NCBI RefSeq assembly: GCF_902713615.1
Contig: NC_052146.1
Location: 69,460,555-69,523,237, forward strand
Direction of reading: 5' to 3'
DNA length: 62,683 nt
Source of the DNA: Scyliorhinus canicula
Lineage: Eukaryota
The notes below the pieces were generated by a model that made no database searches, was not told the DNA's origin, and was given only the letters and a program-made list of their open reading frames with translations. Shown in pieces: positions 11,421 through 56,527 of this stretch; within the stretch, counting starts at the first letter, position 1, and every line of letters starts with the position of its first letter. The translations under genes and the position numbers were made by a program.

Positions 11421-11629
11421 ATATGCCAGTCAGTTGGATGTCTATTTGTGAGGCAGCCCTTTAACTTTGGCTCGAATTACTGAAGAGGATGTTTTAAGGT
11501 GGAGGGGCCTGTGTGAGTCTTTGTTGTGTGCCCAGTGTCTGTGTCGATGTTGCGTGTATTCGTATTAAACTGTTTTCTGATGGTTTGTTGTAAATGAAAG
11601 GATTACTGGCCCATTTCAGAAGGAAACTA

Positions 11630-11870
11630 ACAGACAGTTAGACTGTTTGGGGTCTGGGGTGACAGAAAGGCCAGACCAGCTAAGGATAGCACATTTCCAT
11701 TCCTTAGTGACATTAGTGAAGGATTTTAATGAAAGTCAAATGGCTTCACTTTCACCATTACTGAGGTAGATTTTCTTTAGCATTCAAGTTTATTGAATGG
11801 GATTCCGCAGGTGGGATTTGAAACCATGTATTTTAAATTAGTAATCCAGGCCTCTGGGCTACCGATCCAC
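11630..11870 (-). mobile_element. Deu-domain (SacSINE1-like) SINE relic
   Basis: tRNA-like head and central domain similar to 12240-12590. Confidence 0.5.
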
Positions 11871-11949
11871 GATCACGATCCGACCGCAATCGCCATGTCC
11901 CTGCATATTTCCCGCTGCCTCTCCAGGATGCTCCGGGCCCTACATCTGC

Positions 11950-12235
11950 CGTCATAATTCTTGAAATGGAGAGTGAAGGTATTGATGAAACATCTGGTGA
12001 AAATATGTAAGAGTAAATTGACCAAACGAAGCACTCCTTCATCCTTAGCCCGTGTCCATTCAATATGATGTTGTACCTTGATGATTCTAGCATTATTTGT
12101 TAAACGGAACATTCTATTATCCTGCACACACCTTGCATTGGATTCATACTACTGACTACTCCAATGTGTATGCAATTACCCGTTGCAAGAAATAGTTCTG
12201 CATCTACCACCAGCAATTTCCTCGAGGTCTTCCCA
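11950..12235 (-). mobile_element. Decayed L2/CR1-group LINE RT C-terminal relic
   Basis: HHIEWTRAKDEGVLRLVNLLLH resembles the SHINxxATRAGQRLGILRRVxHLL segment; part is shared with 42540-42640. Confidence 0.45.
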
Positions 12236-12239
12236 CTCC

Positions 12240-12590
12240 ACTATAATTCATTCATGGGATGCGGGCGTAGTTGGCAGGTCCACCCTTAATTTCCCTTGAA
12301 CTGAATAACTTGCCCATTTTCAGAGGGCTTTTAAGAGTCAACCACTATTATGTGGATCTGGAGTCACATGTAAGCCAGACAAGAACGTTGGTGGCAGATA
12401 TCCTTCCTTAAATAGCATCAATGCACCCGATGGCTTTTTAGGACCATCATCATAAAACCTTAAATTACAGATTTTTAAAATCGAATTCAAATGTTACCGT
12501 TTGCCGTGGTGGGATTCAAACCCCCCAGTGTATTATCTTGGGTCTCTGGATGACCAGTCCAGTGACAGTGCAACTAGCCACCGCCTTCGC
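12240..12590 (-). mobile_element. Deu-domain (SacSINE1-like) tRNA SINE
   Basis: Contains the reverse complement of GGCTTACATGTGACTCCAGATCCACATAATAGTGGTTGACTCTTAA...CTCTGAAA, a Deu-domain-like core, with a tRNA-like head at the right end. Confidence 0.7.
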
Positions 12591-12879
12591 ACAACTCAGG
12601 CGGACTCTTAGAAGAAACTCATCTAAACTACAGGGTGAAATTGATTTTAGATCTTGGCACTAAACAGGCAATAGCTGCAAAAGCTGCGGTGCAGTGGTGG
12701 AACCCCAGAGGATATTCCCATTCCACAATTCCAGTGATCGTGCCATTATGTCAAGGTGATGACAGTATCTCATCTGTCAATTTTTTTCTTTAGTAAACCA
12801 GAGCCGAGAAACCATAAGGGTTATCTGACTTATCTTTACCAACTAATGATAACACTCTTGATGGTAGACGCAAGATTTA

Positions 12880-13935
12880 TACGAACATAAAAAATAGGAG
12901 CAGAAGTAGGTAATTCAATCCCTCGAATCTATTCCGCTATTTGATAAGATCATGGCTGATCACTTTGTTTCTACTTTTAAATTCCCATCTGCTCCCAGTA
13001 ACCTTAGATTCCCTTACTGAGCAAGAATATATCTGCGTATATCTGCTTTCCTCTTAAAAATATTCAATGACCCCGCCTCTACCACCTTCTGAGGCAGAGA
13101 GTTCCAAACGTTCTGAGAGAAAACACATTCTCCTCACATCTGTCCTAAAGGGGCCACCTCTAATTTTAAAACTGTGCCCCCTAGTTCTGGTCTCACCCAC
13201 AGGAGGAAATATCATTTCCATATCTACCTTGTCAAGGCTATTCAGGATCTTATATACTTCAATCAAGTCACCCCTCACGTTTCTAAATTCCAGTGGAAAC
13301 AAGATAAGGGTGTCCATCCTTTCCTCAGAAGACAACCTGCTCAATCTATGTATCAATCTAGGAAACCTCCGTTGAACTTTCTCCAATGCATTTACATTCT
13401 TCCTTCAATAAGGAGATCACAACTGCACACAGTGTTCAAGATGGACTTTCACCAATACACTGGTATTGTGAAGCATTACTTCCTTACTTGTATGTTCAAT
13501 TCTTCTCATAACAAAAGGTGGAATTCAATTCACCTTCTTACTTCCTTGCTGTACCTGCAGAAGTTTTTTGTGGCACATGCACGAGAACGCCTAGATCCTT
13601 CTACAGCCCAGAATTCTGCAGCTGTTTTCCACTTAAGTAATAATCTACTTTTTAAATCTTCCTCCCAAATTGAACAACTTCACATTTTCCCACATTATAC
13701 TCCATGTGCCAAATGTTTGCCCACTCAACCTATCTATGCCGTCTGTAACCTCCTTATGTCCTCTTCATAATCTACTTTCCTACCTATCTGTGTGTCATCT
13801 ATAAATTTAGCTACTATGTCCTCACTCCCCTCATTTAAGTCAATTATATAATTTGTAACACGTTGAGGCCCCAGCACAGAACCCTGGGGGACTCTACTCC
13901 TCACACCTAGACAATCAGAAAAAGGACCCATTTAT
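12880..13935 (-). mobile_element. CR1 LINE 3' portion
   Basis: ORFs 13734-13931 (RVPQGSVLGPQ, AKFIDD) and 13054-13386; CR1 3' UTR at the left. Confidence 0.9.
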
Positions 13936-14079
13936 GCATACTCTTCGTTTTCTGTCAGCCGACTGCTTACGTGCAGATTATCCATTGGTCAGGTATGTGT
14001 TTAGACCTCAACAGACAGCACACAAAGCTGAATCCAACAATTCAGTACAACAGCAGCTGATTTACTTCAAACCGGTTGG

Positions 14080-14310
14080 CTCTAAGGGGGCCATATCCTG
14101 CCTGTGCCATATGTTACTGCATCAGTAGGCGTCCATAACACCTCTGTGTTATATGTTACATGACCAGCAGGTGGCCACATCACCTCTGTGTCATATATTA
14201 CAGAACCAGCAGGTGGCCACATCACCTCTGTGTTGTATGTTACATGACCAGCAGGTGGCCATAATACCTCTGTGTTATATGTTGCTGCCCCAATAGGTGG
14301 CAATGTTGCA
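14080..14310 (+). repeat. 42-bp tandem array, about 5.5 units
   Basis: Unit about CACCTCTGTGTYATATGTTACATGACCAGCAGGTGGCCACAT; cores start at 14080, 14122, 14164, 14206, 14248, 14290 (exact 42-bp period). Confidence 0.95.
14164..14301 (+). promoter_or_regulatory. Cluster of candidate CTCF-binding elements (each perfect unit also holds a CAGGTG E-box)
   Basis: CCAGCAGGTGGC x3 (14164, 14206, 14248) and CCAATAGGTGGC (14290) versus CTCF core CCASYAGRKGGC. Confidence 0.65.
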
Positions 14311-14509
14311 TCACATACACAGGATCAGCAGAAATGTGAAATAAATACCTTATCCGATATCTCATCAGTAGAAAGAACATCCCGCCGTTAAATATATAAA
14401 TTTTAACCAGAATATTAACAACTTAAAGACATTTGACTTCGTATTCACCATAATTATTCATACAAACTATTTGATATTTCTGATATTTTTGTCTTGAACT
14501 AACATTTCT

Positions 14510-14640
14510 TGTTCTCTCCTGGTTCTTATTCTCTCCATGCTCTTCTCTCGCCATGCACCTTCTATCTCTGTGTTTGTTCACTCCATGTTTCTCTCCCTCC
14601 GTGCCTTGCTCTCTCTATGCTCTTCTCTCTGCCCACTCCT
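14510..14640. repeat. Degenerate CT-rich pyrimidine tract
   Basis: Repeated CTCTCCATG / CTCTTCTCT-like units. Confidence 0.5.
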
Positions 14641-15115: not shown

Positions 15116-17228
15116 TGACCACAGAGTGAGTGGTCACACACAGGGCAGCTCCTGCTTAAAGGCACAGAAAATAACTCTTTTTACCCGATACTGGTGGAAT
15201 TTTGATGAAAAGGCAGATGTGAATGTTGGAGGAGTAGTTTCCCCCGAGAGTGGTATGTCTGTTGGCTATCAGGCCCAGCACAAAACAGTGAGAGATTTGC
15301 ATGAAACGTTTGAGGGAGCCTTTGCTGCAGCAGCCACTGTAAACATGCAGGTGCGGGAAGGGCTGATGCAAGCTGGAAGGCCACAGATGGAGGAGCTGAT
15401 GGCGTTTATTAAAGATGAATTCTGCCGGCAAAGAAAGGAAAGGTGTGAGGATCACTCAAAGGCCATCGTAGGAGCTGTGGCACCCCTGAGGAGTTCTCTG
15501 GAACGGGTGGAGAGGTGTTTGGAGGTGAAAAATTCACAGATTCGGGAGATCAAAGGAGAGATATCAAACTACAGCGATCATGTGGTGGCTCTGGAGGCGA
15601 AGGTGAGGCTCCTAGGGGACCTGTGTAAAATGTTGAGGGCAAAGTTGGAGGAGCAGGAGAATGCCTCAAAAAGACAGAACCTGCAAATTGTGGGCCTGCC
15701 TGAAGGAGTGGAAGGTGTGAGGCCACGAGGTACATCTCAAAGGTGCTGAAGGGCTGGCAGCAGAAGGGGAGCTACATGAGGCTCCTGAAGTGGATCGAGG
15801 GCATAGGTCCCTGAAGCAGAAGCCTAGAGCTGGGGAACCACCATGGGCGGTGATCATGAAACTTCACAAATTTGTGGAAAAAGAGAAGATTCTACGATGG
15901 GCCACGGAGAACCGTATCTGTGACTGGGAGGGGAATAGCATCTGAATTTATCAGGACGTCAGAGCCGAGTTGGCAAAGCGATGGGCAAGCTTCAACAAGG
16001 CCAAGACGGTGCTGTACCAGTGGCAGGTCAGGTTTGGGGTGCTCTACCCGGCGAAATTATCGGTGATGTTCAGAGACCGGGGGATTTATTTCAACACCCA
16101 AGGAGACTTCATTAAGGAGCATAAACTGGAGAAGAACTGAGCGGATAATGCTTGGGAACTGGGGTGCTGGCACATTGTAATAGTTGGGAGCATGTTTGAA
16201 GTGGGGGTAGGGATTGGGGGATTTTCGTCTGTTTTGGGGGATGGGTTTGCTGTTTAATGTTGAGATTGTAAGGGGTCGTAGGGGTGAAGAGTTTATGTGG
16301 GGATGGATGTTCCCATCGCCTCCTCCTGTTGTATGGGACTGGTTGTGTTTAACACCTGTTTTTTGCTTTTGGAGAAGACTACCTGGAGTTCAGAAGTCCG
16401 TGTTTGGTTGGGGGAGGAGGGTAAGGTCAGCAGGGAATCTTCCTCCTTAAGCTGAGGAGTGGGGGTGGGATGGAAGGGGAGATCATTGGGAGGTGCATTT
16501 GGACTGGGGCAGCTGTGCTAGTAATTTACGCTGGTGAACGGAGGTGAGGTGATGTGGGAGAATGCCTCAAAAGGGGTGGCCGTGTGCCGAGGGGAGGGGG
16601 AAAGGGGGCCTGTTGGGGAGGGGGAGGGGCGCAAGGTTGTTGCAACATGGCAGGGGGTGAGAAATTACATGGTCAGGGCGGCAGAGGGGCCTATCTGGGA
16701 TGAGCTAGGTATAGGGTGGGAGTTAAGTCGGCAAGATGATGGACGGTCGAGGGGATTGGAGGCATAATCCTACTGTAAGGCTGGTAACGTGGAACGTACG
16801 GGGATTACATGGGCCAGTTAAAAGGTTACGGGTGTTCACGCACCTCAGGAGCTTGAAAGCGGGACTGGTTTTTCTGCAGGAGACGCACCTCATTGTGAAG
16901 GACAAGTTAGGTTAAGGAAGGGGTGAGTCGGGCAGGTTTTTCACTCGGGGTTTGATTTGAAATCGAGGGGAGTGGTGATTTTAATGGGCAAATAAATGGG
17001 ATTTGTGAGTGCGAAGCAGTTGAGGGATCCAGGTGGGAGATATGTGATTGTGAGTGGGGTATTGGAAGGAGCACCGGTAGTGTTGGTAAATGTGTATGCC
17101 CCAAATTGGGATGATGTGGGTTTTATGAAGGGGTTGCTGACAGCGATCCCAGGTTTGGCCATGTACCAGTTGATCATGGGAGGAGATTTTAACTGAATTC
17201 TAGATAGGTCGAACCGCAGGACGAATGG

Positions 17229-18260
17229 TGTAGCCACCTAAGATGGACACTGGGCTAACAAAATGGAGAACTGCTAAGACTGTAGGGAGAAAACAGTCTT
17301 AGCCAGGACAAGCAGTCTGCAAAAGGCTAATTAGCATTCTGCACGTATCGAAACTAGTTTATGGCCAGGTGAAAAATCTCAACCTAAGGTATAAATAGCA
17401 AAACGCTTTGCATAGTAATGAGGCGATCCAGATCTGGGCCCACACAATAGCAACATTTGGGTTTGAATGGATACTTTGAGTGGAGGCCCAGACGAAACGG
17501 CACCAGAAGTATCCATCACAAAAGACCCTAGAGACCGCCCCACCCATCGAGAAGAGACCCTCAGATTGGGGGATTTGTAAGACATCGATTGAGAAATGAC
17601 CCAATCGATACATGGCAGGTAGAGGCCCGCCCCGAAAAGGCACGGACATTGGGGGACCTATAAAGGCACATGGTTCTGTCTGTTGACTCCGGCCCAGGTC
17701 TGTTGACTCCGGCTCCATTGCTGTTTTGCTCCGGCCTCGCTGTCTGTTGTTGCTCCGGCTTGCTGTTTCGACTCCGACTCCAGCCTCCAGATCCTGTCTT
17801 CCATCACCAGCCGTTGAGCACCAGCCATCATTCAGTAAGTGCCAAAACGACGCTCGCTACGTGAACCCGGCATTGCTTATACATTATTCGACTATTAGTG
17901 AACAGAAGGTGCAGCCCAGAAAGGAACAAAGGCCTTGTCCCCTCACCTTGCTGGCTCCTACTTAGATAAGTATTTAGTCGTCTAATAGTAGAAATAGGTA
18001 TTAGTCTTTAGCGTATGCATGCGTATTTATTATATTTGTATAATAAATATTGATCGTTTGAACTTACTGATCGGTGTATAGTTTTATTACTTTGAACCTG
18101 ACCTTGAAATACTTGTGAGGTGTCTAAATACGGCACCTGGCGACTCCGAGCTGAAAATACACACACAGAGCTGTAGCAGTGTTAAGCACACGGCCTTTAA
18201 ACGGAGGCGTGTTAATACACTCCAATAAACGCGTAATACACTCAAGTAAAACGTGCAACA
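17229..18260 (+). mobile_element. Solo LTR (1032 bp), Gypsy/ERV-type
   Basis: TGTAGC...GCAACA termini, 4-bp TSD ATGG/ATGT; removal restores L1 APE reading M-A-R-E; TATAAA 17659-17664; tandem CTGTTGACTCCGGC-like repeats; AATAAA near the 3' end. Confidence 0.85.
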
Positions 18261-20565
18261 ATGTCGAGGGAGCTGGGGGGGGGGGTTATGGGGAGGATGG
18301 GTATGGTGGACCCATGGCATTTTCAGAACCCGGGGGAAGGGAGTATTCCTTCTTTTCACAAGAAGGTGTATTTGAGGATTGATTACTTTGTAGTGAGTTG
18401 GGAGATTTTGGTTGGGGTGGAGGGGGCAGAGTATGCGGGGATAGTTATCTCGGACCATGCACCCCACTGGCGGGAGATTTGGTTTAAAATGGGGCAAGAG
18501 CAGAGGCCGGGGTGGAGGTTTAACTTTGGGTTGTTGGCGGATGCAGGTTTTTGTGATAAGGTGCTGGTGGCGATTAAGGAGTATATGGAGATGAATCAGA
18601 ATGGGAAGGTGTCGGCAGCCACTTTTAGGGAAGCACTTAAGGCAGTGGTCCAGGAGGAAATTATTTTGTTATAGGCTCGTGCTGATAGGGAATGGAGGGA
18701 GGAACATGACCATCTAGTGAGTGAGATAGTGGAGGTGGACAGGGAATATTCGAGGATACCCACCGTGGAGGGATTGGCAAGGAGGAAAAAGTTGCAGGGG
18801 CAAATTGACAGGCTGACAGCAGGGAGGGCGGCAGGGCAACTGCTTAGGGCAAAGGGGGATGCAGTATAAGTATGGGGAGTATGAGTATGAGACGCATCCA
18901 GGTGCACCAACTGCAGAAGCAGGCTGCGTCCAGGGAAATAGTGAAGATATGGACTGAGACTCGGGATGGGGTGTCGGAGCCAGGGAAGGAGGCATTTAGG
19001 GAGTACGACCAGGGACTTTCTGATGCGGGCCCAGGGTGGAAAGAAGGGGACATGTGGCGGTTTCTGGACGAGCTGGAAATTCCCCAGGTGGAGAAAGCAA
19101 AGAGGCAGGTGTTGGAGGAGCCCCTGGGGCTGAGGGAGGTGCTGGATAGTATCAAGGGTATGATGTTGGGCAAGGCTCCTGGGCCAGATGGATACCCAAC
19201 GGAACTTTAGAAGGAATTTGTGACGGATCTGGCACCACATCTGTTGGGGGCGTTTAATGAAGCACTGAAGAAGGGGGAGTTGCTGGAGATGATGATGCAG
19301 GCAATTATCACACTAATCCCCAAAAAAGAGAAGGACCCTGTGGAATATGGGTTGTATAGACTCATATCACTATTGAAAGTATTGGTAAAGTTGTTGGCAG
19401 GGAGGATGGAGGACTGTGTCCCGGGGTGGTTCCAGAAGATCAAACAGGCTTTGTGAAGGGCAGGCATCTAGCGAGTAATATAAGACGGCTGTTGAATGTG
19501 GTGATGCATCCGTTAGGGGCTCTGGTACTGGAGGTGGTGGTGTCCATAGATGCAGAGAAGGCTTTTCATCGGGTGGAGTGGTACATCGAGTACTTGTTCG
19601 AGGTTTTGGGAAAGTTTGCTTTGGGCCGAGATTTGTGGCATGGGTGCGGATGCTGTATGTGGCATCCAGGGCGAGGGTGAGGACAAATGATATGAGAACA
19701 ACAAGCTTTGACTTACACAGGGGATGTCTGCTGTTGCTGCTGCTGTTTGCGCACACCATAGAGCCATTGGCGATCACTCCCAGGGGGTTGGCGGAATGGT
19801 GAGGGATTATGGGAGGAATGAGAGAGCATCGGGTATTGCTGTAAGCCGATCGCCTCTTACTGTATGTTTTGGGTCCGTTGGAGAGTATGGGAAGGATTGT
19901 GGGCCTGCTGGGCAGGTATGGAGTGTTCTCGGGGTACAAACTGAATGTAGGGAAAAGCGAGGTATTCCCGGTGAATGAGCTGGGACAGCGGTCTAATTAT
20001 GGGGTTGCCATTTACGGTAGTGAGGGATAGGTTTAGGTATTAGGTGATTCAGGTAGCAGGGGAATGGATAGGGCTCCATAAGTGGAACTTAACAAAGCTG
20101 GTGGAGGAGGCCAGGGAGGATCTTAAGAGGTGGGATCCACTGCACTTAACGTTGGCGGGTAGGGTCCAGATGGTGAAAATGAATATTCTGCCGAGGTTCT
20201 TGTTTATCTTTCAGGCTCTCCCGATCTTTAGACCAAAGGCCTTTATTCAGAAAGTGGACAGGATCATTTTGGACATTGTATGGGGGGGGGAAGATGCCGA
20301 GCATGGGGAGGACCCTGTCACCGAGGCAGAAGCAGCAGGGGGTTTGGCATTGCTGAACTTGCTTCATTATTATTGGGCGGCGAATGTGGACAAGGTGCGG
20401 CGGTGGTGGGAAGGAGAAGGGGTAGAGTGGGTTAGGATGGAGGAGGATCTTGTAATGGGTCTAGTTTGAGGGCTATGGTGAAGGCAGTGTTGCCAATGGC
20501 TCCGAGTAGGTATTCAGGGAGCCTAATGGTGCAGGCCATAGAACCAGCTGGGGAGGCATTTTGGG

Positions 20566-21111
20566 TTTTTTAAAATGTATTTTATTACAAGCATATATCA
20601 AAACAGGTTACAGTGAATAAACACCCTGGCAAACATACTTCCCAACAATCATCCATATAGTCTGTACAGGTTTTTTAAACACGGTCCCCACAAAGCATTT
20701 TTGTCCGTGGCCAGAAACTTATATGGAATATTGGACGTCATAAATAGAAGCATTGAGTATCAAAGAAGGGAAGGTGTGTGTGGCTCTGATTAGGCCAGAA
20801 CTGGGGATTTACGTCCAGTTCTGATCACCACACTTTAGCGACGATATGAACGTCCTTAAGATGGTACAGATGGGATGTACCAGAATGGTACATCCCCACA
20901 TTTCCTCAAACACCCTGAAGAGCTGCTTAACTCATACTTTATCTTCTCTAATCGCAGGAAGTCGTGCAGGTCACCCAACCAAGCCGCTATCCCCAGTGGC
21001 GATGCCGACCGCCACTCCAGCAAACTTCACCGCCGTGCAATCAGAGAGTCGAAGGCCAAGACATAGGACTTCCGCCTCTCCATGAGCTCTGGCTCCATGA
21101 GCTCCGGCTCA
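20566..21111 (-). mobile_element. 5'-truncated L1 inserted antisense into the host L1
   Basis: T-rich 3' end at left, ORF2 C-terminal sequence 20890-21100; flanked by an 18-bp imperfect TSD (20548-20565 / 21112-21129, 15/18). Confidence 0.85.
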
Positions 21112-22584
21112 CTGAGGAGGCATATTAGGATGGAAAGGATGTCAGTGCTAACGCCACTGTGCGAGAATCATGGGTTTGAGCCGGGGCGGGGGTGGGGGGG
21201 GGGGGGGGGGGGGAATGGATAGTGTATACAGGAGGTAGAGGGAATGGGACTGGTCAAGGTGAGGGATTTGTATTTGGAGGACGGGTTCGCCAGTCTGGAG
21301 GAGCTAAGGAAGAAGGTAGAATTGCCGAGGGGGAGTGAGTTCAGGTATCTGCAGGTTCGGGTGAAAGTTCTGGAGGGGGTTCCTTAGGTTGCTGGGATCA
21401 CCCTGCTGGAGCGACTGCTACTTCCGGATTTGTAAGGGGATGGAAGAATTGGGGATATATACAAGTGGCTGGGGGAGCAGGGAGGCGAGTGGGTGGTGAA
21501 GATCAAGGAGAAATGGGAACTGGAGTTGGGAGGAGAGATCAATTGGGGAATTCGGAGGGAGGCACTGCAAAGGGTAACAGGATCTCCTCTTGAGCAAGGA
21601 TGAGCCTGATACAGTTTAAGGTGGTGCACTGGGTGCATATAACTCGGCCGAGAATGAGTGGATGCTTTCAGGGGGTAGCAGATGAGTGCAAGAGGTTTCG
21701 GGCGCGGGCCAGCGAATCATGCGCACATGTTTTGGGGTTGCAAAAAATTGGGAAGATTCTGGGCGGGAATGTTTGCAGTCTTAGCCAGGGTAGTGGAGGA
21801 GCAGGTGGACCCGGACCCTTTGATGGCAATATTTGGGGTTTCAGAGACGCCGGAGCTCACGGAGAGGAGGAACACCGATGTTGGGGCCTTCACCTCGCTG
21901 ATTGCACGGCGGCAAATTTTGCTGGCATGGTAGTTGGCATCGAGGGTAGTGGCTTGGTTGGGTGACCCGTACGACTTCCTGTGGTTGGAGAAGATAAAGT
22001 ATGAGTTAAGGGGTTCAGCAGGGGGGTTTGAGAAAAAGTGAGGGATGTTTGTGACCGTGTTTGAGGAGCTGTCCATTGCAGGGGAGTGGGGGGAGGGGGC
22101 TGGAGGGAGCCTTGCAAGTATATTTTCATGAAGTAAATCTTCTTTCCTTTTGAAATAATTGATTGCCTCTGTTCCCAGAAACATTAATGCGTTCATTATC
22201 ACTAAAAGAATCTTACTCAGATCTTCCCTGTACGTCTTACCCAAAGTCCTAAATCTGTGTTTGCTACTCATTACATCTCTACCTCATAGAAAACTACCAT
22301 TGTCTTGTGCACTCCTATCAAATTCCCCTTTACTCCAGGTGAAAAACCCCTGTTATCCAACTTGTACCTAATATTCCTCATCCCTAGAACCATTCTGGTA
22401 CATCTCATCTGTACCATCTTAAGGACCTTCATATCGTCGCTAAAGTGTGGTGATCAGAACTGGATGTAACTCCCCAGTTCTGGCCTAATCAGAGCCACAC
22501 ACACCTTCCTTTCTTTGATACTCAATGCTTCTATTTATGACGTCCAATATTCCATATAAGTTTCTGGCCACGGACAAAAATGCT
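20694..22584. repeat. 196-bp inverted duplication (20694-20889 vs 22389-22584)
   Basis: Manual alignment of the reverse complement: 191/196 identical, ungapped. Confidence 0.95.
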
Positions 22585-22590
22585 ATGTCA
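22130..22590 (-). mobile_element. Decayed CR1 3' fragment
   Basis: CR1 C-terminal nucleotide pattern; donor of the 196-bp inverted copy. Confidence 0.75.
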
Positions 22591-26025: not shown

Positions 26026-26074
26026 ATGGCTGAATGGGTTGGAGTTCTTGCAGCACTAATGCTTTGTCTCCACA
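26026..26074 (+). CDS. IGL: IgL leader exon
   Basis: Kozak CACCATGG, hydrophobic MAEWVGVLAALMLCLH, donor GTAAGT at 26075. Confidence 0.95.
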
Positions 26075-29000
26075 GTAAGTGTTACTTTAACCTTCCCTAT
26101 TGCTGCTATTTACATTGTTCCCGTTGTTTGTGCTTGGGTTTAACGTAGCTGAATAACAAACAATAGCGACAATTGTAGAGTTTGACAAATCAATAACTTA
26201 CTTATTTCACCAGGTACGATCGGAGACCCTGTCCTAACCCAGCCAGGATCCATCTCAACCTCCCCGGGGGAAAATGTCAAGATCACCTGTACCATGTCCG
26301 GAGGCAGCATCAGTAGCTACTACACGAGCTGGTACTGGCAGAAACCCGGCAGTGCCCCTGTGCTTGTGTGGAGTGAGTACAGTGGTAAACCTTCCAATAT
26401 CCCCGATCGGTTCATGGGTTCTGTGGACTCATCGAGTAACCAGATGCATTTAACGATCAGCAACGTGCAATCGGAGGACGCCCCAGATTATTACTGTGCT
26501 GTGGCGAGTTCAGGGATATACACCTTTGGAAGAGGAACCAAGCTGAACCTAGACAGTAAGTAAATTAATTGCCGCATTTCTGTAAACATTTTAAAAAACA
26601 CTTTAAAACTATTGGGATGGTTGATTAAATTGGAGCAAATTAAGACTGTTGCTCATAAAATATATTTAGACGCAGCTAACGAACCAGTCAGTGTCTTGCG
26701 ACACGGAAGAGAGTCAGGCACAATTGCGGCCAATTTTACAGGCAGTACCCATGCTTTAGAAAGTGTACAGGAGGAATTTTTTCTCAGATAAAACCTGACT
26801 GCCGAGTTTTAATTTGGAGAGAACCAGAGTGAAACCCGGTTCACCGGGAGCTTCCGGAATGGTGTGGCCGAAATTTGCTCCATTATCTTGCAGCATAATA
26901 GATGCTGAAATATTCACCTCCCGACCAATCAGTAACCCGAGGACGTCAACTAACTCTCATTGCGAGAAGTTTGAAGGGACAGGATAGGATATATTCTTTA
27001 GCCAAGGGACTGTTCGCACTGCTGACTCTTACCTATAATAACAGGGTGAGCAGAAACATCGCAATGTTTCAACGCAAAACGGAGAAACATTTATAGAAGG
27101 AAAAAACAATAGATTAGAAATAGACTCAATGCGCGGTCTTTTCAAAGACGGCGGTTCATTCTGTGTTCCAGAATTCCAAGATTGTATGGATCCCCCCAAA
27201 AAATAGATTGACTCACAGCCCCGGTTAAAAGGTGAAGACGCAAAATCAAAATTTCATTCCACTTCGAGCAATAGCGCACATCAAAACCCTTCTCGGATTC
27301 ATCAGGTTAACGTGACAACTTGCTGCAACTTAATTTCGGTTCTAAATCCAGAGCAAACCGTTCAGAGAAATATTCTCAATCTTCCATTTCGCAATAATCC
27401 CGGAGGAGAACAATAAACGTACTAGTAATCAACTCGTTATAATCATCCCTACTCCTCCAATATCAGCATAACGGAATAACAAGCACCCTAATTGACATTC
27501 CCTTAATATCTCACCGGTTCATTATCTTCCATCCGATTAAATGTGTGTGTATCTCAGACGAGGTTTTCAGATCTGTGTACCTGATTTTTGATTCACTCAG
27601 TTGAACTTCGCTGTTGGTTCTATAATTAGCCAGAAAGGAGTTGTGCTTTGAGTGTTCCGTTTACTCTATTGCCATTTTGATTTGACTTTCAGCTGGCATC
27701 ATGGTGAAAAGGGCTGAGATGAAATACAAAAGGGAAAAGGCTCAATCATATTTTCAGTTATTTATCTAATAATACACACCTGTCAGAAATGTTAGCGTAA
27801 AATCCCTTTCGTTTAGACAATATTATCAACTGATGTCAAAAGCTGCTCAATAATCCCACGGGCGGCACGTTCGCACCGTGGCTAGCACTACTACCTCACA
27901 GCGCAGCGCCAGGGACCGGGGTTCAATTCGGTGGAGATTTTCCATTTGCTCTCCGTGTCTCGGAGGGTTCTTCGGCTTCCTCCCATAGTCCAAAGATATG
28001 CAGTTTAGGTGGATAGGCCATGCGAAATTGGTCCTTAGTGTCCAAGGTGGATTGTCCCTTAGTGCCCAATGTTACGGGGGTAGGGCAGAGTGTGGGTCTA
28101 ACTGCCGGCTCGATGGATCGAACGGTCTCCTTCTGCCCTGAATGGATTATGTGAGTTTCAGATATTTCAGTATCACGGTGTTCATTATAAAGCTCCGATG
28201 ATAAAGGTCAACGGCACTTATCAGGCTGCCCGGAGTGTCAGCCTCCTAGATATAACGTTAAAAAAGTAAGACGAGCTTGTAGGTTCCAAGGAAAAATTCT
28301 CCCAATGTTAAACCGACACGGGGAGGTTTGGGACTGCCAAGACCCGTCCATAGTGCTGACACTGCATTTCAATATTACAACCAATCGTAGCGGCTGGCCT
28401 ATATTACAAAAACTGAACAAAGTAGTATTGTTTCAATCTTTTCTTACATTAAATTAACAATTTACCAGGAGTTTCTCATTGCAGCTGGTGCTTATATGCA
28501 CGGTGTAAACATTCAGTTAAAGAGAGTGTGGCAGTTTATCTTCAACCTCTTACATTGGGTGAAATGTTAGTATCATGGGGATATTTATTTTTAATAATAA
28601 ACTGAAAGAACTATCATTCCTGTAGCAACCCCTCGGGACATCCGAACTTGCTTTACAATCAATTGTGCGCATTTTATTTTCAGGATAGTCCTGTTTGGTG
28701 TGTAAGGAAAGCGGGAGCTGATTTCCGCGCAGCAAGACCCTCAAACACCAATCACCAATTATTCTGTTCAAGCGATATTGGCTGAGAGATAAATAGTGGC
28801 CAATTCATGTTGGTTGCATTGTTTGCATATTGAGGTTGTTGGTGGGTTAGTATTATAGAAAGCATGGGTTAAATAACATGGGTTATTTGTTGGAAACTGT
28901 TTCCTGTTTGGTGAAGATGTTAACACTTGCGACACTGTGAGCCCAAAGGGCCGTGATTAGGGAAGCATACGGTAGCATAGTGGTTAGCACAATTGCTTCA

Positions 29001-30242
29001 CAGCCCAGGGTCCCAGATTCCATTCCCGGCTTGGGTCACTGTGGGGAGTCTGCACGGTCTCCCGTTTGTGTAGGGCTTTCCTCCGGTTTCCTCCCACAGT
29101 CCAAAGATGTGCCGGTTAGGTGGATTGGCCATGCTAAATTGCCCTAAGTGTCCAAAATTGCCCTTAGTGTTGGGTGTGGTTGCTGGGTTATGGGAATAGG
29201 GACTTGGGTAGGGTGCTCTTTCCAAGAGCCGATGTAGACTCGATGGGCTGAATGGCCACCTTCTGCGCTGTAAATTCTATGATATCTATGATCTTCCCGA
29301 AGGGAGTAACTCTTGAATGTAGCCGAACAGTCTTCTGAAGTGTCACACATGAAACCATAGTCGGACCGTGGTTGGGGCTGTGGGGCGACTGGGTGTGAGA
29401 CCGGGAGAGAAACAGTGTGCAATCTACGAAAGAGCAGATCGGCCATGTTAGTGACAGAAATCCAGATATTAGCCCAATGTTTCCCACTTCCGTGAAAATA
29501 GATTCAAGTTGGAATTTTTTTAATCGTTTGTTTAACAGTAAATTGCTTAGAGTCGAGTGTTCTGAGTTTCATTTGCTACCAATCTGTCCTAAGATTTATT
29601 CCGAATGCCAATTATTTGCTTTATATATCCTGATATTATTTCCTGTTAAAATTGTCCGTTAAAATTCTATTTCCTCTTAAGATGTTGCAGGTGTTTACTG
29701 CCATGCAGAAAACGTCGGATATTTTAACAGGTTATATATTGTTCAGGACTGTTGGGACCAGTAGTTGTGCAGTTAACAGTAACGAGAGTTCCTTCTATTC
29801 CATTCACCATAGCTTTGTACAGTGACGTGCAATCTTCAAATATTTCAACAACGGAAAACAGTGGTTACGATTTTGTAGTCAATTAAGAATGAATCGCCTT
29901 TGTCTTATCTACTTTTCAGATCCACAACCCCCCTCGGTGTCCGTCCTTCCGCCGTCATCGGATCAAATCGCAGCGAAGGACACAGCGACCCTGGTGTGTT
30001 TGGTGAGCGGGTTTAACCCGGGAGCTGCGGAGATTGAATGGACTGTAGACGGCAGTGTCAGAGGGAATGGGGTTGAGACCAGTCGGATCCAGCAGCAGGC
30101 GGACAACACGTTCAGTGTGAGCAGCTATCTGACTCTGTCAGCCTCAGAGTGGAACTCACACGAGCTTTACTCCTGTCTGGTCAAACACGAAACTCAGGCC
30201 AATCCGCTGAAAACAAGTATCTCGCGATCCAGCTGTATGTGA
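26026..30242 (+). CDS. IGL: Immunoglobulin light chain, cartilaginous-fish type II (lambda), germline-joined VJ; join(26026-26074,26214-26555,29920-30242), 237 aa
   Basis: Three phase-1 exons with GT-AG introns splice to a 714-nt open frame: MAEWVGVLAALMLCLHSTIG-DPVLTQP...FGRGTKLNLD-NPQPPSV...SRSSCM*. Confidence 0.95.
26214..26555 (+). CDS. IGL: IgL pre-joined V-J exon
   Basis: Acceptor TTCACCAG; Cys23 (KITC), WYWQKP, YYC, CDR3 AVASSGIYT, FGRG J motif, donor GTAAGT at 26556; no RSS or spacer between V and J. Confidence 0.97.
27860..28150 (+). mobile_element. HE1-like SINE in the J-C intron, older copy
   Basis: GGGCGGCACG head, CCAAAGATATGCAG core, CR1-like tail. Confidence 0.8.
28965..29292 (+). 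mobile_element. HE1-like SINE in the J-C intron
   Basis: Closely similar to 42148-42505; tail GTAAATTCTATGAT. Confidence 0.88.
29920..30242 (+). CDS. IGL: IgL constant (C1-set) exon
   Basis: Acceptor CTTTTCAG; PSVSVLPPS, TLVCLVSGF, IEW, YSCLVKH, penultimate Cys (SSCM*) for the H-L disulfide. Confidence 0.97.
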
Positions 30243-30559: not shown

Positions 30560-30760
30560 TCTAACGATGACCGTGAAACCATTATCCATTGTCCTAAGAA
30601 AACATCAGATTCACTGAAATCCCCAAGAGAAGGAAATCTGCCATCCTTATTGCTCTGGCCTACATGTGACTCCAGACCGACAACAATGTGGTTGACTCTT
30701 AACCTCCCTCTGAAATGACTTAGCAGCCATCTTAGCTCAAGTGCAATTAGGGATGGGCAG
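30560..30760 (+). mobile_element. Deu-domain SINE core
   Basis: GGAAATCTGCCATCCTT...CTGGCCTACATGTGACTCCAGACC...GTGGTTGACTCTTAACCTCCCTCTGAAATG. Confidence 0.7.
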
Positions 30761-31281: not shown

Positions 31282-32849
31282 GGTCCCTCTTTTTAAAAAT
31301 TCAACCTCACACTAATCACAAATCATGGTGTCCCTTCAGTACAAAGTATTCTTTGATCAGACTGATTTCGTAATGGAATAAATAAATTGCTACAAGTGGA
31401 ATCGCACGCTGTTAAGGCTTGTAAAAATACAAACTGTAAGAAACTTAGGTGGTGATTTTTAGTATAAGGAAAACAATAATTCAACAGCCCAAATTTACTG
31501 ACGAACCCAACAGGGCCAAAGGGAGCCATGTTGGAAGTGACGTATGGTTTCCTGAAAAGAACTAATTCATGTATTGTTACTCTGGCAATGAATAAAGCAA
31601 ACCAACAGCAAACAATATTATAAACTGAACCTCGATTAATTCAACTTGAAGACTTTAGATTAATCAATAGTTATTCAAAAATGCGGAACTAAATTAACAC
31701 TCCTTATAATCTTTTTAAAACACATGTCACTGCAATTTTGAAAAAGTGTAAACTTAATTTTAGTGTAATATCATTCCTGCATGTACTTTACAGCAATATA
31801 ACGTATAACTATTTTTGAAACGTGTCTGTGACAACAGATTTCAAGCTGCATGCCTTGGCAATGATAGTAAAAGATCTAACCCTTGATAATCAAAATAATT
31901 TGCATTATTCGTTTACCTTTTTAAGTAACCTTTTATAAACTTAGCTGCATGATGTTACTTTTTAAAGTTTTCACATTTAAATCAGGCAATTTCCTTGGAG
32001 TCCATGGAGGGCTATAAGTCAAAAGAATGTCCCCAACAGTTTAAAAACAAAGACAAGGCTGCATATTGTAATGTTCGTGTTCATGGTAACAATAGATAAG
32101 GACCAGGCAACCCACAGAAATAGTTGAATTGATAGACACTGAAGTCAGGTGAACCTCGAATAAAAGATAACTAAAGAGTTATTAATTCATTGGTAGAATT
32201 GGCTTCTAAACTTAAACAAGTTGGCAGTGGGCGCGGTGCGAAAGGAAATTGCTTTTGGGCCGGACTGAAGTAATAGAACTAGGTATGTCCTCTTGGTGCA
32301 TCATTAAGTGGATTGGGCGAACAGATTATTTCAGAACTGGCAAAGCTGCTGTGCCGACTGAGCCAGAGGTGTGGATAAATCAGATTGCAGTAACTGGAAT
32401 CTCCCCCACTCCCCGCAAACCACCATCCCCGAACCCCCGCTCAGCGACCCCCCCCCCCCCCATCCTCCACAACGTTATTCGGTTTCCTGATGAGTGATCC
32501 AGCAGTAAAACTCTTGTTTTTTGGTTTTATATATGTTGCTGCGTTTAGTGTTTAATAGGAGATCACTAAATTTGAATTGGTTTAAGTGAGGTTAAAGATT
32601 TAGAGAGTAAAAAATGAATCCGCATCACTGACACCCACTGTCCTTTGTTGGGACATTTTGTCTCCGAGAACAGCGCCACGTACAAAGGTTCTGATAGAAT
32701 GATCGGAGACCACGTGGACAACTAGACCATGCTAAACAAAACTGAAGTATCACGATCAGAAAATCCAGAAAACAGATTTTCGGAATGAAGCTGATTTCAA
32801 TCCAGTGCAAAGAGAAGCAAGACTGCGTGCCTGATTCAGAAGAGGTGGC

Positions 32850-34203: not shown

Positions 34204-34237
<34 letters not shown>

Positions 34238-37841: not shown

Positions 37842-37871
37842 TTCTGCCTAAAGTCTCCTCCATTTCTCATG

Positions 37872-40550: not shown

Positions 40551-40599
40551 AAATGCATGTGGGAAATAAGAATTATTGTGGTAGAGGACTGTCAAAAAG

Positions 40600-41210
40600 C
40601 TAATGTTATATATCTATTGAAGAACTTGGATCGAACATGTGCAGCAAATTATACACCAGTCAACCTAATGTCAGTCGCAAGAACGTAATGGTTACAAATG
40701 ATAAATGTAATAATGAATAGTCAACAAGGATTCCGTGGATCTTTGTTCAGCAACGTTAAGTTAAACAAATTAAGAAGAGGCGATTGGCCATTGGAATACC
40801 GTTCACAGTCGACATGATGTTCGTGGATTTTCCCATTGTGAGGAAGCAGAGAAGATTTAGAACATTATCTAAAATGCGAGTCCATGATATGGAAGAAGAT
40901 GGGCCTTTTTCTTCTGGGGACAATAGGCAGGGGTGGAACCTATCGAACCTTGAAAAGTTGAGCGGATGCACGGAGACAAAATTGCGCTTTTGAGAAACAA
41001 CTTAACTGGAGAATATCAGTATAGACCAGTCATCAAGAAATCCAATGGGCTATTCGGAAAAAAATATATCAGCCAACTAATGGTGAGAATGTGGAACTCC
41101 CCACCGAAGGGAGTGACTGGTGACTGAAGCATATATTACAGACGTAATTAATGGGATACTGGACGAGCATTTGTGCGGAAAGAGTGTTACGTTGATAGAA
41201 TATGATTAGT
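40600..41210 (+). mobile_element. Very old CR1 relics
   Basis: Patchy similarity (YTPVNLMSV; MVRMWNSP) to CR1. Confidence 0.4.
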
Positions 41211-41264
41211 GAATGGGCGAGGAGGTTCAGTGCAGCATAAAACCCATATCGACTGGGTCCATTT

Positions 41265-41582
41265 GGGGCCTCACGGTAGCATGGTGGTTAGCATCGATGC
41301 TTCACAGCTCCAGGGTCCCAGGTTCGATTCCTGGCTGGGTCACTGTCTGTGTGGAGTCTGCACGTCCTCCCCGTGTGTGCGTGGGTTTCCTCCGGGTGCT
41401 CCGGTTTCCTCCCACAGTCCAAAGATGTGCGGGTTAGGTGGATTGGCCATGCTAAATTGCCTGTAAGGTTAATGGGGGGATTGTTGGGTTGCGGGTATAC
41501 GGGTTACGTGGGTTTAAGTGGGGTGATCATTGCTCGGCACAACATCGAGGGCCGAAGGGCCTGTACTGTTCTATGTTCTATG
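41265..41582 (+). mobile_element. HE1-like SINE, young full-length
   Basis: Nearly identical to 61198-61525; tRNA-like head, (TTCTATG)n tail. Confidence 0.9.
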
Positions 41583-41759
41583 ACTGTTTAGGAGAATGGC
41601 CGACATTTTACTGTGTTCCCTATCTGTTAATAAGAGTGGCTAATCCGCCGCCTGTGACCGTCTGATTCTAAACAACCTTTTAAAAATATATAATGAATTA
41701 TTCAGTCGCTTTATTGGTGTACGTTGCTCGGACGATGTTCCAGTGGTTTTTTGCAACTG

Positions 41760-42010
41760 AGTGACATTTTGAACGTTTGCAGTGGGAAGCTGGGAGTCTC
41801 GGAAACGGTTTTAGGGTTGGAGTCGCATATATACTAATTAAGGATGGCCGATTTCCTGACCTGAAGAATGTGAATGAAGCAAATCGTTTTTTCAGCAATT
41901 GAGTGGTTCATAGTTAACATCACTATGAGCCTTTTTTTTTCTTCCAGATTTATTTATTAATTGACGAAGAAAGCCCTAGATGGCCACGCGCTTGGACCAT
42001 CAGTCCAGAA
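41760..42010 (-). mobile_element. Deu-domain SINE relic
   Basis: Weak similarity to 11630-11870 and 12240-12590. Confidence 0.4.
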
Positions 42011-42147
42011 CACCACCTTTCTTATTCAGTGGCTTAATCACTACACTTCCGACCCATTCATAGCACGTTGTACCACTTTCTGTTCCCTTGTTTGTCTCTT
42101 TGATGCTGATCCTACACTTGTCATCATAACGTTTGAAATGTCTCATA

Positions 42148-42505
42148 AGCGGCAGCACGGTAGCATTGTGGATAGCACAATTGCTTCACAGCTCCAGGGT
42201 CTCAGGTTTGATTCCCGCTTGGGTTACTGTCTGTGCGGAGTCTGCACATCCTCCCCGTGTGTGCGTGGGTTTCCTTCGGGTGCTCCGGTTTCCTCCCACA
42301 GTCCAAAGATGTGCAGGTTAGGTGATTGACCATGCTAAATTGCCCTTAGTGTCCAAAATTGCCCTTAGTGTTGGGTGGGGTTACTGGGTTATGGGGATAG
42401 GGTGGAGGTGTTGACCTTGGGAAGGGTGCTCTTTCCGAGAGCCGGTGCAGACTCGATGGGCCGAATGGCCTCCTTCTGCACTGTAAATTCTATGAATTCT
42501 ATGAT
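42148..42505 (+). mobile_element. HE1-like SINE, full-length
   Basis: GGCAGCACGGTAGC head, V-domain core, tail CTGTAAATTCTATGAATTCTATG. Confidence 0.9.
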
Positions 42506-43197
42506 AATTTGGCGATCTTTGTTAAAACTCCACGATAGCATCCTGAACACACTTTTCACTGCATTCATTCACAGACTCCAATGTGTGCGCGATGATTCGT
42601 CCTAGAAACCACGTGTGCAACCATGAACCAGGTATTTCCTCCACCTTTATCCATTCCAAAGTGGTAGCTACCGTATATGTTCGGAATAAACTGAGGGTTT
42701 TTAATTAGATCGTCCCGCTGAACGGACAATAGAGATTGATTCACAGTTTTTACTGCCTGCGCAAATACTCTGCGATTCATTGACCCGTGTTGCTCCATCA
42801 CCAAAGCCCAATTTCACTTCCCCCGGTTTCTACAAGATTGCGCACAAGTGGAAACTGCAATGTATCTCGCTGATGGTCCCGTTATTAAATCGGGACATAT
42901 TTTCTACCCTGTTTTCCCCAGCCTTTATTTATTAAACATCGCCGGAAAACCATCAGCCAACCCAAGAACTGCCATGTTTCCACTTAATGCTGATTTTCTG
43001 CACAACAGATGCAAGATGAAAAAAAAAATCAATTGGCCAGGTATGAGTTTACATATCACCAGGTGTTTCGCACTTGACTATATACTTGTGCCAATGTTCA
43101 CAAATAATTAAAAATCTGATGGGAAATTTAAAAAAAAATCAATGCTGCTGCAGAAGGCTTGCTTGAAATCCTACAGTTCGAATGCTGCTGTGTCATT

Positions 43198-43241
43198 CCT
43201 TTGTGTCATGTGCTACCGAACCACAAGATGGCAATGTTGCA
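43198..43241 (+). promoter_or_regulatory. Single candidate CTCF element homologous to the 42-bp array unit
   Basis: CCACAAGATGGCAA at 43221-43234; 27/35 ungapped identity to 14183-14217. Confidence 0.55.
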
Positions 43242-43759
43242 CTTCGTGTTCGCAAGGCCTTGAAAATATATTTCATGAAGAATGATTAAAATATTTCATA
43301 CCATTAACAACGCTAACAATCCGAGTTGGCTATCTACTATAATTGATTACGCCAACCCTTTGATTAGTCCGAAATTGACTTTAATCATGTTTTCCAGTTT
43401 CTTAGCTCTGCCTTTTAAAGTTTTAACATCATCCCCACAAACCACCCATAGGACATCTTTGCACACAACGCAACCGAAATATTTCACAAAGAAGCTTCGA
43501 GCCCTTCTGTTGAATTACGCTCAATAAAACCCTTCCATTATAGCCGTCGTTAAACGTATTTTAGCCACACCATGTCACTAACCAATATATTAAACACGAC
43601 CATGTTCTTTCCAGTGGTGGTAATCTGTTTCCCGGTGGATAATAGCGGTTACAATTTACACTAACCCCTGCTTTCCAAACAAGAAGTTGGAAGCCCATAC
43701 ACATAGTCGTGAGATTTCTTCAAGCCCACAACTAAACCCAGGCATTCTTTTTAGATCTG

Positions 43760-54010: not shown

Positions 54011-54559
54011 TTTTACTGATCTTTTTTTATCTCCATAAGAGTTTCTCAATTATTGTATGAAACAGGGGTTGTTGAGTTGTTGAGGATGGTGTTGTCCATT
54101 TTGACGGAGTGTCTGTGTCCACCTGAAGTCCGTTACAATCTTACTCATTGCTTACTGCGATTTTGAATTCCGTGCCATCTAAAAACTTTGACATCATACC
54201 ATGTATCCACAACTACGTCCTTGATAACGATTAAGAAATGTGCTGGTCACAACGGAATTCTGGAGACACCAGTGCACAATTACCTTCAGTCAGAAAATGC
54301 CATTCACTACGACTCACCAATCCCTACCCGGGGTTGTTTCCAAGCAGCAAATGGCCCTTTAATCCCATGCGGTTTTAATTTCGTTAACAAGTCCATTACC
54401 TCCTAAATTATCAATCATTTTATGAATGTCCGTGTGCACAGCACCAGCTGCACACCCTACAATTTCCCTCCTCATTGAGGATATGCAACACATCTTGTTT
54501 GTAATAAGTTGGCTTTATTCATGCATTATATGTGGGCTCCGCTAATTCGGTCAGTATTT

Positions 54560-56250: not shown

Positions 56251-56527
56251 CTTGATCCCATAAACGTTAAACGCTGCTTTGATGCATATGGCAGTCTTGA
56301 TGGTTCACAGTTGTTCATCTACATTTTACCAGATGTCAAATACTTCAATCTAATTATCTTAAAATTGAGAGGAAAGAATGAGTTAAAGGAACACGTCAAT
56401 ATCTGGGAGAAAGTGAATTAACTAATCACATTCATCATCTTGTGCGAGGAAACTAACAGCGAGAAAGCAGCATTTTGTACATTTCACCCACTACTATTAA
56501 GACATGAAATGCGATGAACACATTGTT

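What the first reader, a model, noticed from the sequence alone, without database searches (positions are those of the whole stretch)
11950..14480. Old colinear duplication brackets the IgL cluster (left copy; partner about 42050-43380)
Seen: at least five blocks match in the same order and orientation: 12119-12147 vs 42540-42568 (24/29), 12647-12674 vs 42705-42732 (21/28), 12789-12818 vs 42928-42956 (23/30), 13982-14014 vs 43030-43062 (26/33), 14183-14217 vs 43198-43232 (27/35). Weaker patches continue on both sides. The left copy was later interrupted by a Deu-SINE and a CR1, the right by an HE1 SINE. Most matches are in non-repeat DNA. Established: shark Ig genes occur as many independently rearranging or pre-joined clusters. 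Inference: this is the repeating unit of an ancestral tandem IgL cluster array, and the module marks cluster edges. It predicts another cluster (or its loss) to the right of the window.
Basis: partly seen in the sequence, partly recalled or inferred. Interest (0 to 1): 0.8.

Follow-up and report, generated by a model that had tools for sequence, protein, structure and literature searches.

The report
Old duplicated spacer in shark antibody locus
Two stretches of non-coding DNA on either side of a catshark antibody light-chain gene are real, very old copies of each other, with a third copy 50 kb further on; they are most likely neutral leftovers of the duplications that built this multi-gene locus, which is ordinary for shark antibody genes.

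Summary
The left stretch (about 11570-14530) and the right stretch (about 41735-43404) share a colinear, same-strand chain of blocks at 65-80% identity. The score is far above shuffled, reversed and real-sequence controls (48.5 against a null of 14.5 +/- 1.9, maximum 22). A LINE-like element, probably CR1-like, sits in the left copy exactly where the right copy is uninterrupted.

The picture is larger than two copies bracketing one cluster.
- A third copy (M3) lies outside the window at window-relative 90552-93610, 7.7 kb upstream of another plus-strand lambda cluster.
- The right copy (R) aligns with M3 continuously at about 72% identity. The left copy (L) is the outgroup.
- L and M3 each sit upstream of the sister clusters cl1 and cl3.
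- R starts a block colinear with the M3 block as far as the inverted clusters cl2 and cl4, but its own plus-strand cluster is missing.

The unique parts of the module match nothing else in the 4.2-Gb genome. Only 2 of at least 10 lambda clusters have a module upstream, so it is neither a transposon nor a one-per-cluster marker. No coding frame or Rfam RNA family was found.

Best reading: a neutral relic of two rounds of segmental duplication. Interest is low to moderate.

The parts
11570..14530 (+). Left module copy (L): ancient paralogue of R and M3, ending 11.5 kb upstream of the cl1 leader exon
   Evidence: Colinear local alignments to R and to M3. nhmmer E = 1.4e-13 and 1.8e-16. Real-sequence null.
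11581..11765 (+). Old SINE-like piece present at the colinear position in all three copies (R 41744-41903, M3 91722-91851), so it predates the duplications
   Evidence: It also has weak matches to other interspersed copies (30588-30756, loci L018 and L019). The family name was not verified.
12242..12609 (+).
12878..13979 (-). R is the empty site, with only 12 bases (GAAAAAAAAAAT) between the flanks.
   Evidence: At least 13 other diverged copies lie in the 232-kb region. Pfam recognises none of its ORFs, so the CR1 label rests on my memory of the ORF2 C-terminal motif.
14102..14301 (+). 42-bp tandem array (about 4.4 units, plus a further diverged unit to 14310). It is amplified only in L; R (43195-43241) and M3 (92943-92990) have a single unit.
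   Evidence: TRF. Three-way alignment of the unit shows an invariant run TGGCAATGTT. Motif scan.
26026..30242 (+). Lambda (type II/NS3) IgL cluster cl1: leader exon 26026-26076, germline-joined VJ exon about 26216-26556, C exon about 29920-30239, then the stop codon
   Evidence: Exact mapping of the NCBI-named S. canicula protein P0001. Pfam V-set and C1-set.
40560..43583 (+). Right module copy (R). It starts 10.3 kb downstream of the cl1 C exon. It is sister to M3 (one alignment, 72-73% identity). Only its right part, 41735-43404, is alignable with L.
   Evidence: A genome-wide search with 40560-41240 finds M3 as the only long match.
41227..41597 (+). R-specific HE1-type SINE insertion. It is not the same insertion as the SINE in M3 at 91395-91686: the sites are about 100 bp apart and the R copy is up to 93.6% identical to other genomic copies.
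42143..42513 (+). Young HE1-type SINE inserted in R. It replaces roughly 100-200 bp that L and M3 still have.
   Evidence: 5536 first-look candidates, best copies 94-97% identical. Three-way alignment. Junctions.
54093..54529 (+). Unique spacer piece paralogous to 126788-127235, colinear with R to M3 and cl2 to cl4; part of the larger duplicated block
   Evidence: E = 2e-26. No other long match in the genome.
56296..56484 (+). Second spacer piece paralogous to 127230-127437, in the same colinear chain
   Evidence: E = 1e-15.

Best explanation
The two stretches are paralogous copies of about 1.7-3 kb of non-coding spacer from the catshark (Scyliorhinus canicula) lambda light-chain multi-cluster locus. 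A third copy (M3) lies 50 kb to the right of R. They are relics of at least two rounds of local segmental duplication that also copied the germline-joined VJ-C clusters.

Inferred history:
- An older duplication gave [L + cl1] and [proto-module + proto-cl3].
- A younger duplication of a block of about 50-64 kb, containing module, plus-strand cluster, spacer and inverted cluster, gave [R ... cl2(-)] and [M3, cl3(+) ... cl4(-)].
- The plus-strand cluster expected after R was then lost.
- Each copy later took its own SINE or LINE insertions, and L amplified one 42-bp unit into a tandem array.

Shown: the paralogy, the copy number, the tree (R,M3),L, the empty-site relationship and the positions relative to the clusters. 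Inferred: the order of events, the loss of a cluster, and the view that the module survives by slow neutral decay rather than by function.
For: - Significance.
- Colinearity on the same strand among all three pairs.
- Copy-specific TE insertions with an exact empty site in the partner. An older SINE-like piece is shared at the same position by all three copies.
- Not a repeat family. The unique parts of L, R and M3 hit only each other in the 4.2-Gb genome. A profile of the best-conserved core scores the three copies at 114-119 bits and the next hit at 24 bits. No further copy lies in 332 kb of held sequence.
- Non-coding. tblastx matches between R and M3 are short and spread over several frames on both strands. 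There is no Rfam family.
- Tree. Among three-way aligned sites R=M3 at 181, L=R at 104 and L=M3 at 86. K2P is about 0.46 for R-M3 and 0.69-0.75 for L against either.
- Same geometry for two copies. L ends 11.5 kb upstream of the cl1 leader exon, and M3 ends 7.7 kb upstream of the cl3 leader exon. cl1 and cl3 are each other's closest plus-strand clusters.
- Divergence matches the neighbouring genes. R-M3 is 72-73% identical. cl2-cl4 non-coding DNA is alignable throughout at 71-78%. L-M3 is patchy at 65-84% per block. cl1-cl3 is alignable only near the exons, at 69-70%.
- Extended colinear chain: R, 54093-54529, 56296-56484, cl2 against M3, 126788-127235, 127230-127437, cl4.
- Background: multi-cluster shark IgL loci are held to arise by duplication of whole V-J-C units (PMC2193156). 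All lambda genes studied so far are germline-joined (PMC4279169).
Against: - No Ig remnant lies between 30.6 and 73.3 kb, so the lost cluster after R is inferred, not seen. R could instead come from a duplication that never included a plus-strand cluster.
- The cl1-cl3 J-C introns are almost unalignable, while about 40% of the TE-free L copy still aligns with M3. This could hint at constraint on the module, or it could reflect heavier TE turnover in the introns.
- R-M3 identity per 100 columns is over-dispersed (chi-square p = 0.001), though the highest window is flanked by large gaps and is probably inflated.
- Sensitivity is limited. The genome search missed copies at about 62% identity in one case, and only 150 of about 41,564 profile candidates were scored. 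More diverged copies near other clusters cannot be excluded.
- No other species could be examined.
Confidence: 0.75

Rival explanations
1. The module is kept by selection as a cis-regulatory or boundary element of lambda clusters, for example an insulator or enhancer carrying the CCAGCAGGTGGC-type unit (CTCF-like core containing an E-box). That would explain why it is still recognisable when most surrounding spacer is not.
For: - The single 42-bp unit is present in all three copies, with a 10-base invariant run TGGCAATGTT. It is amplified about five-fold in L.
- Two copies sit at similar distances upstream of plus-strand clusters.
- Spacer between the module and the V exon, and the cl1-cl3 introns, are mostly unalignable.
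- Identity along R-M3 is mildly uneven.
Against: - The exact CTCF-like core occurs only in L. M3 has one mismatch and R has two, which also break the E-box.
- R-M3 similarity is spread over the whole 3 kb at the same level as cl2-cl4 introns, as neutral decay predicts.
- At least 8 of 10 lambda clusters have no detectable module.
- R has no cluster to regulate.
- Nothing here tests binding or chromatin state.
Confidence: 0.15
2. One reading: a regular tandem array in which each IgL cluster is flanked by one module that marks the unit edge, so that L and R are the two edges of the cl1 unit.
For: - L and R flank cl1 at similar distances, 11.5 kb upstream and 10.3 kb downstream.
- Further clusters exist to the right.
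Against: - Only three copies exist for at least 10 clusters.
- Spacing is 30.4 kb and then 50.0 kb.
- No cluster follows R at the expected place.
- The next cluster is inverted.
- R is sister to M3, and its block is colinear with the M3 block up to cl2 and cl4.
Confidence: 0.05
3. The similarity comes from an old low-copy transposable element, or from a chance mosaic of old repeats, inserted three times near each other.
For: - Parts of the module are old interspersed repeats: R 40970-41190 has about 96 weak genomic matches, and the SINE-like piece at 11581-11765 has other copies.
- The search tools miss very diverged copies.
Against: - The unique parts have no matches outside the three copies.
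- All three copies are on the same strand within 80 kb of one chromosome in a 4.2-Gb genome.
- Unique DNA and nested repeats occur in the same order in each copy.
- Neighbouring genes and spacer pieces are co-duplicated.
- There is no coding capacity.
Confidence: 0.04

Closest known systems
Multi-cluster organisation of cartilaginous-fish Ig light-chain genes, generated by duplication of whole V-J-C units (review PMC4279169; Lee et al. 2000, PMC2193156)
   Same: - Several lambda (type II/NS3) clusters lie on one chromosome, each with a germline-joined VJ exon and one C exon.
- Paralogous non-coding DNA travels with the clusters.
   Different: The duplicated non-coding piece lies 8-12 kb from the gene. 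It survives in only three copies. One copy has no cluster. Clusters are in mixed orientation rather than a uniform tandem array.
Segmental duplications and degenerate duplicons in vertebrate antigen-receptor and other multigene loci
   Same: - Same-strand colinear paralogy.
- Copy-specific transposon insertions with empty sites in the partner.
- Divergence similar to that of the neighbouring paralogous genes.
   Different: It is very old (K2P about 0.5-0.75) and short. Most of the original duplicated unit has been overwritten by transposon turnover.
CTCF-binding boundary elements of mammalian Ig loci (IGCR1, Cer/Sis, 3' CBEs); named from my own knowledge, not tested
   Same: A CTCF-like core motif lies in intergenic DNA between antigen-receptor gene units.
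   Different: The exact motif is present only in the left copy. There is no binding, orientation or function data. Most clusters lack the module.

Membership tests
Segmental (local) duplication relic | Similarity significantly above shuffled and real-sequence controls | tested here: met
Segmental (local) duplication relic | Colinear blocks in the same order and orientation, consistent across all copy pairs | tested here: met
Segmental (local) duplication relic | Low copy number and confined to one locus, not dispersed | tested here: met
   Three copies, all within 82 kb. Sensitivity is limited to about 65% identity.
Segmental (local) duplication relic | Later insertions in one copy face an uninterrupted site in another | tested here: met
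   LINE-like insert 12878-13979 against R 43017-43030. SINE-like insert 12242-12609 against M3 92465-92489. HE1 at 42143-42513.
Segmental (local) duplication relic | Neighbouring genes or spacer co-duplicated with comparable divergence | tested here: met
   L+cl1 against M3+cl3, and the R block against the M3 block up to cl2 and cl4. The plus-strand cluster after R is absent.
   At least 10 lambda C exons on C1 against three module copies. Nothing was found near cl2, cl4 or the 70.94-71.10 Mb array.
Transposable element family | Many dispersed copies unlinked to the locus | tested here: not met
   Only embedded SINE-type pieces have dispersed copies.
Transposable element family | Coding capacity or terminal repeats of its own | tested here: not met
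   No conserved frame. Terminal repeats and target-site duplications of the whole module were not searched systematically.
CTCF-type insulator or Ig enhancer | Conserved binding motif in all copies | tested here: inconclusive
   Exact CCASYAGRKGGY core three times in L, none exact in R or M3. The neighbouring run TGGCAATGTT is invariant.
CTCF-type insulator or Ig enhancer | Protein occupancy, or insulating or enhancing activity | not testable with these tools
   Needs ChIP, ATAC or reporter assays in catshark lymphoid tissue.

The most novel reading that the evidence does not exclude
The module is a conserved cis-acting element of lambda light-chain clusters in sharks: a boundary or enhancer built around the E-box/CTCF-like unit, tandemly amplified upstream of cl1. 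It would then be retained by selection since before the cl1/cl3 split, and would be the first regulatory element defined for a cartilaginous-fish Ig cluster.
Probability: 0.12. Interest if true: 0.6.

Novelty: new member of a known kind. Interest (0 to 1): 0.25.

Why it matters
It gives a concrete, dated-by-order sketch of how one catshark lambda light-chain locus grew. There were two rounds of block duplication, clusters ended up in mixed orientation, and one cluster was probably lost. It also shows that recognisable intergenic paralogy can outlast the introns of the genes themselves. That is useful for annotating shark Ig loci, but it does not change how these loci are understood. The only route to wider interest is if the shared 42-bp unit proves to be a functional regulatory site.

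Tried and rejected
- I first took the SINEs at R 41227-41597 and M3 91395-91686 for a shared pre-duplication insertion. I rejected this. With the R SINE removed, the M3 SINE aligns about 100 bp away as an M3-specific insert, and the R copy is up to 93.6% identical to other genomic copies, too young for the R-M3 split.
- Cluster remnant after R: nhmmer with leader/VJ and C DNA of four clusters, and tblastn at E up to 20, over 30.6-73.3 kb found only SINE hits and noise.
- Coding or RNA function: no conserved ORF, no Rfam family in the window, L041 or L042. Pfam finds nothing in the LINE-like ORFs.
I tested it only indirectly, through genome-wide DNA and profile searches.
- Cross-species test: the Scyliorhinus torazame orthologue contig (proteins P0002, P0028, P0045) returned no DNA because the file was too large.
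- The first genome search with the whole right copy was swamped by the HE1 SINE.
- 46440-47060 could not be judged as paralogous spacer, because its first 146 bases are a high-copy SINE.
- One search failed because the machine was busy. I repeated it.

Full report
**Observation**

Four have the stated ungapped identities: 24/29, 21/28, 26/33 and 27/35. The third needs a one-base gap. I removed the obvious interspersed repeats from the left stretch and aligned it locally against 42000-43500. The best score was 43.5. One hundred dinucleotide shuffles gave 14.8 +/- 1.8 (maximum 22), the reversed sequence 13 and the reverse complement 15. A real-sequence control gave the same picture: 144 other 1.5-kb windows of the surrounding 232 kb scored 14.5 +/- 1.9 (maximum 22), against 48.5 for the right copy. 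nhmmer gave E = 1.4e-13. Iterated local alignment recovers a same-strand colinear chain:
- 11920-11968 / 42095-42140
- 12042-12240 / 42471-42658
- 12785-12893 / 42924-43028
- 13980-14014 / 43028-43062
- 14264-14528 / 43195-43404

**Anatomy**

- The left copy (L) is broken at 12878-13979 by a LINE-like repeat with at least 13 diverged copies nearby. The flanks on either side of it abut in the right copy (R), separated only by GAAAAAAAAAAT. R is therefore the empty site.
- A SINE-like insert at 12242-12609 is also specific to L.
- R carries a young HE1-type SINE at 42143-42513, with 5536 first-look candidates and best copies 94-97% identical. It carries a second R-specific SINE at 41227-41597.
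- An older SINE-like piece sits at the same relative position in every copy: 11581-11765, 41744-41903 and 91722-91851.
- L has a 42-bp tandem array at 14102-14301 where the other copies have one unit.

**Context**

The genome is Scyliorhinus canicula. The gene between the copies is a lambda (type II/NS3) light-chain cluster. Its leader exon is at 26026-26076, its germline-joined VJ exon at about 26216-26556 and its C exon at about 29920-30239. It matches an NCBI-named protein exactly, and Pfam reports V-set and C1-set domains.

I fetched 70 kb upstream and 100 kb downstream. In window-relative coordinates I found:
- cl0, a different isotype on the minus strand, at -16.8 to -12.1 kb.
- cl2, minus strand, C at 73634-73948 and VJ at 77224-77553.
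- cl3, plus strand, VJ at 101853-102173 and C at 105826-106140.
- cl4, minus strand, C at 134744-135055 and VJ at 141188-141520.

A genome-wide search with the C domain adds a partial C at about 172.8 kb and five more minus-strand clusters at C1:70.94-71.10 Mb.

**A third copy**

Self-comparison of the 232 kb shows that R has a much better partner than L. R 40560-43238 aligns in one piece with 90552-92978 (M3), at 72% identity over 2253 columns, or 72.9% over 1790 columns once the R SINEs are removed. Further colinear patches reach 43583 / 93610. L aligns colinearly with M3 as well, from 11570-11706 / 91722-91851 through 12697-12858 / 92662-92824 and 14295-14324 / 92966-92997 (nhmmer E = 1.8e-16). 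All three copies are on the plus strand. M3 ends 7.7 kb upstream of the cl3 leader exon and L ends 11.5 kb upstream of the cl1 leader exon. R starts 10.3 kb downstream of the cl1 C exon.

**Not a transposon, not coding**

- Whole-genome searches with the unique parts of R (42515-43450; 40560-41240), M3 (91690-92683) and L (11900-12245; 13965-14600) return only the local paralogues, plus short hits to embedded old repeats.
- A sequence-only profile of the best-conserved 157 positions scores the three copies at 114-119 bits and the next genomic hit at 24 bits. Nothing appears near any other lambda cluster.
- nhmmer over 332 kb of held sequence finds no fourth copy.
- tblastx between R and M3 gives only short hits in several frames on both strands.
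- Rfam finds nothing.

Caveats: the genome tool missed a partner at about 62% identity once, and it scored only 150 of about 41,564 profile candidates.

**History**

Among three-way aligned sites, R and M3 share the state 181 times, L and R 104 times and L and M3 86 times. K2P is about 0.46 for R-M3 and about 0.7 for L against either. L is therefore the outgroup.

With the same aligner, cl2 and cl4 are alignable through the promoter, the J-C intron and the 3' flank at 71-78% identity. cl1 and cl3 are alignable only close to the exons, at 69-70%. R-M3 thus matches cl2-cl4 in age, and L-M3 matches cl1-cl3.

Two spacer pieces continue the R-to-M3 chain up to cl2 and cl4. They are 54093-54529 with 126788-127235, and 56296-56484 with 127230-127437. 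The first has no other genomic match.

The simplest account has two steps:
- An older duplication of [module + plus-strand cluster] gave L-cl1 and the ancestor of M3-cl3.
- A younger duplication of a 50-64-kb block gave [R ... cl2] and [M3, cl3 ... cl4].

Between R and cl2 there is no trace of V, J, C or promoter sequence. The plus-strand cluster of the R block was therefore either deleted or never copied. This step is inference.

**Function**

I found no evidence that the module does anything. R-M3 similarity runs through the whole 3 kb at the level seen in cl2-cl4 introns. The over-dispersion of identity (p = 0.001) is driven by a window bounded by large gaps. The one feature worth a test is the 42-bp unit. 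L has three exact CCAGCAGGTGGC cores, M3 has one mismatch and R has two. A 10-base run, TGGCAATGTT, is invariant in all three copies. I give about 0.15 to selection on a regulatory or boundary element.

**Comparison with what is known**

Shark light-chain genes are known to lie in multiple V-J-C clusters produced by duplication of whole units (PMC2193156). [quoted passage not shown] This finding is a new example of that process with some locus-specific detail. It is not a new kind of element.

It is wrong in treating the module as a regular cluster-edge marker.

**Limits**

I could not fetch the second lambda array or any other shark's DNA. Conservation across species and very diverged extra copies therefore remain untested.

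Noticed in passing
window 14102-14310; 43195-43241; L042:260-307: The 42-bp unit amplified in L contains CCAGCAGGTGGC, a CTCF-like core that also holds an E-box (CAGGTG). From memory it resembles the kappa-E2 site of mammalian Ig enhancers. The adjacent TGGCAATGTT is invariant in all three module copies.
   Followed up: partly
L042:318-407 (window-relative 93001-93090); also -12005..-11917 and -63573..-63484: An 89-bp element just after M3 has copies 93-99% identical inside the leader intron region of the upstream cluster cl0 and 63 kb upstream. The Rfam gathering scan of L042 did not report any family.
   Followed up: partly
window 29922-30236 against cl2, cl3 and cl4 C exons: C exons of the four clusters are 91-94% identical in DNA (K2P 0.06-0.09). 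V exons are 69-79% identical and flanking non-coding DNA about 70%. This means strong purifying selection or gene conversion on C.
   Followed up: partly
window 16000-22000, 32000-38000 (G-rich) and 46000-52000 (C-rich): Three blocks of about 6 kb have 50-57% G+C and strong GC skew, with homopolymer tracts (G55 at 34198-34252, C-rich at 47282-47348 and 51286-51322). They are probably large transposons in opposite orientations. I did not identify them.
   Followed up: no
window 20690-20889 and 22389-22588: Inverted repeat arms of 200 bp, 97% identical and about 1.5 kb apart. Possibly the ends of a DNA transposon or a recent local inversion-duplication.
   Followed up: no
G000:C1:69443738-69448468 (window-relative -16.8 to -12.1 kb): A minus-strand light-chain cluster of another isotype lies head-to-head with cl1. 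Its C is 54% and its V 50% identical to cl1, and the V match stops before J. The L module lies between them.
   Followed up: partly
G000:C1:69633363-69633584: A partial lambda C exon (residues 1-74, 95% identical) on the plus strand about 110 kb right of the window. Either a truncated cluster or a frameshifted one.
   Followed up: no
protein P0003: A 125-aa 'hypothetical protein' deposited under Aeromonas veronii, on a 652-bp contig, is 92% identical to the catshark lambda C domain. This is almost certainly shark DNA contaminating a bacterial assembly.
   Followed up: no
window-relative 63732-64518 and 71912-72706 (L039/L040): Direct repeats of about 790 bp, 85% identical and 8.2 kb apart, just downstream of the cl2 tail. 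The geometry fits the two LTRs of a retrotransposon.
   Followed up: no
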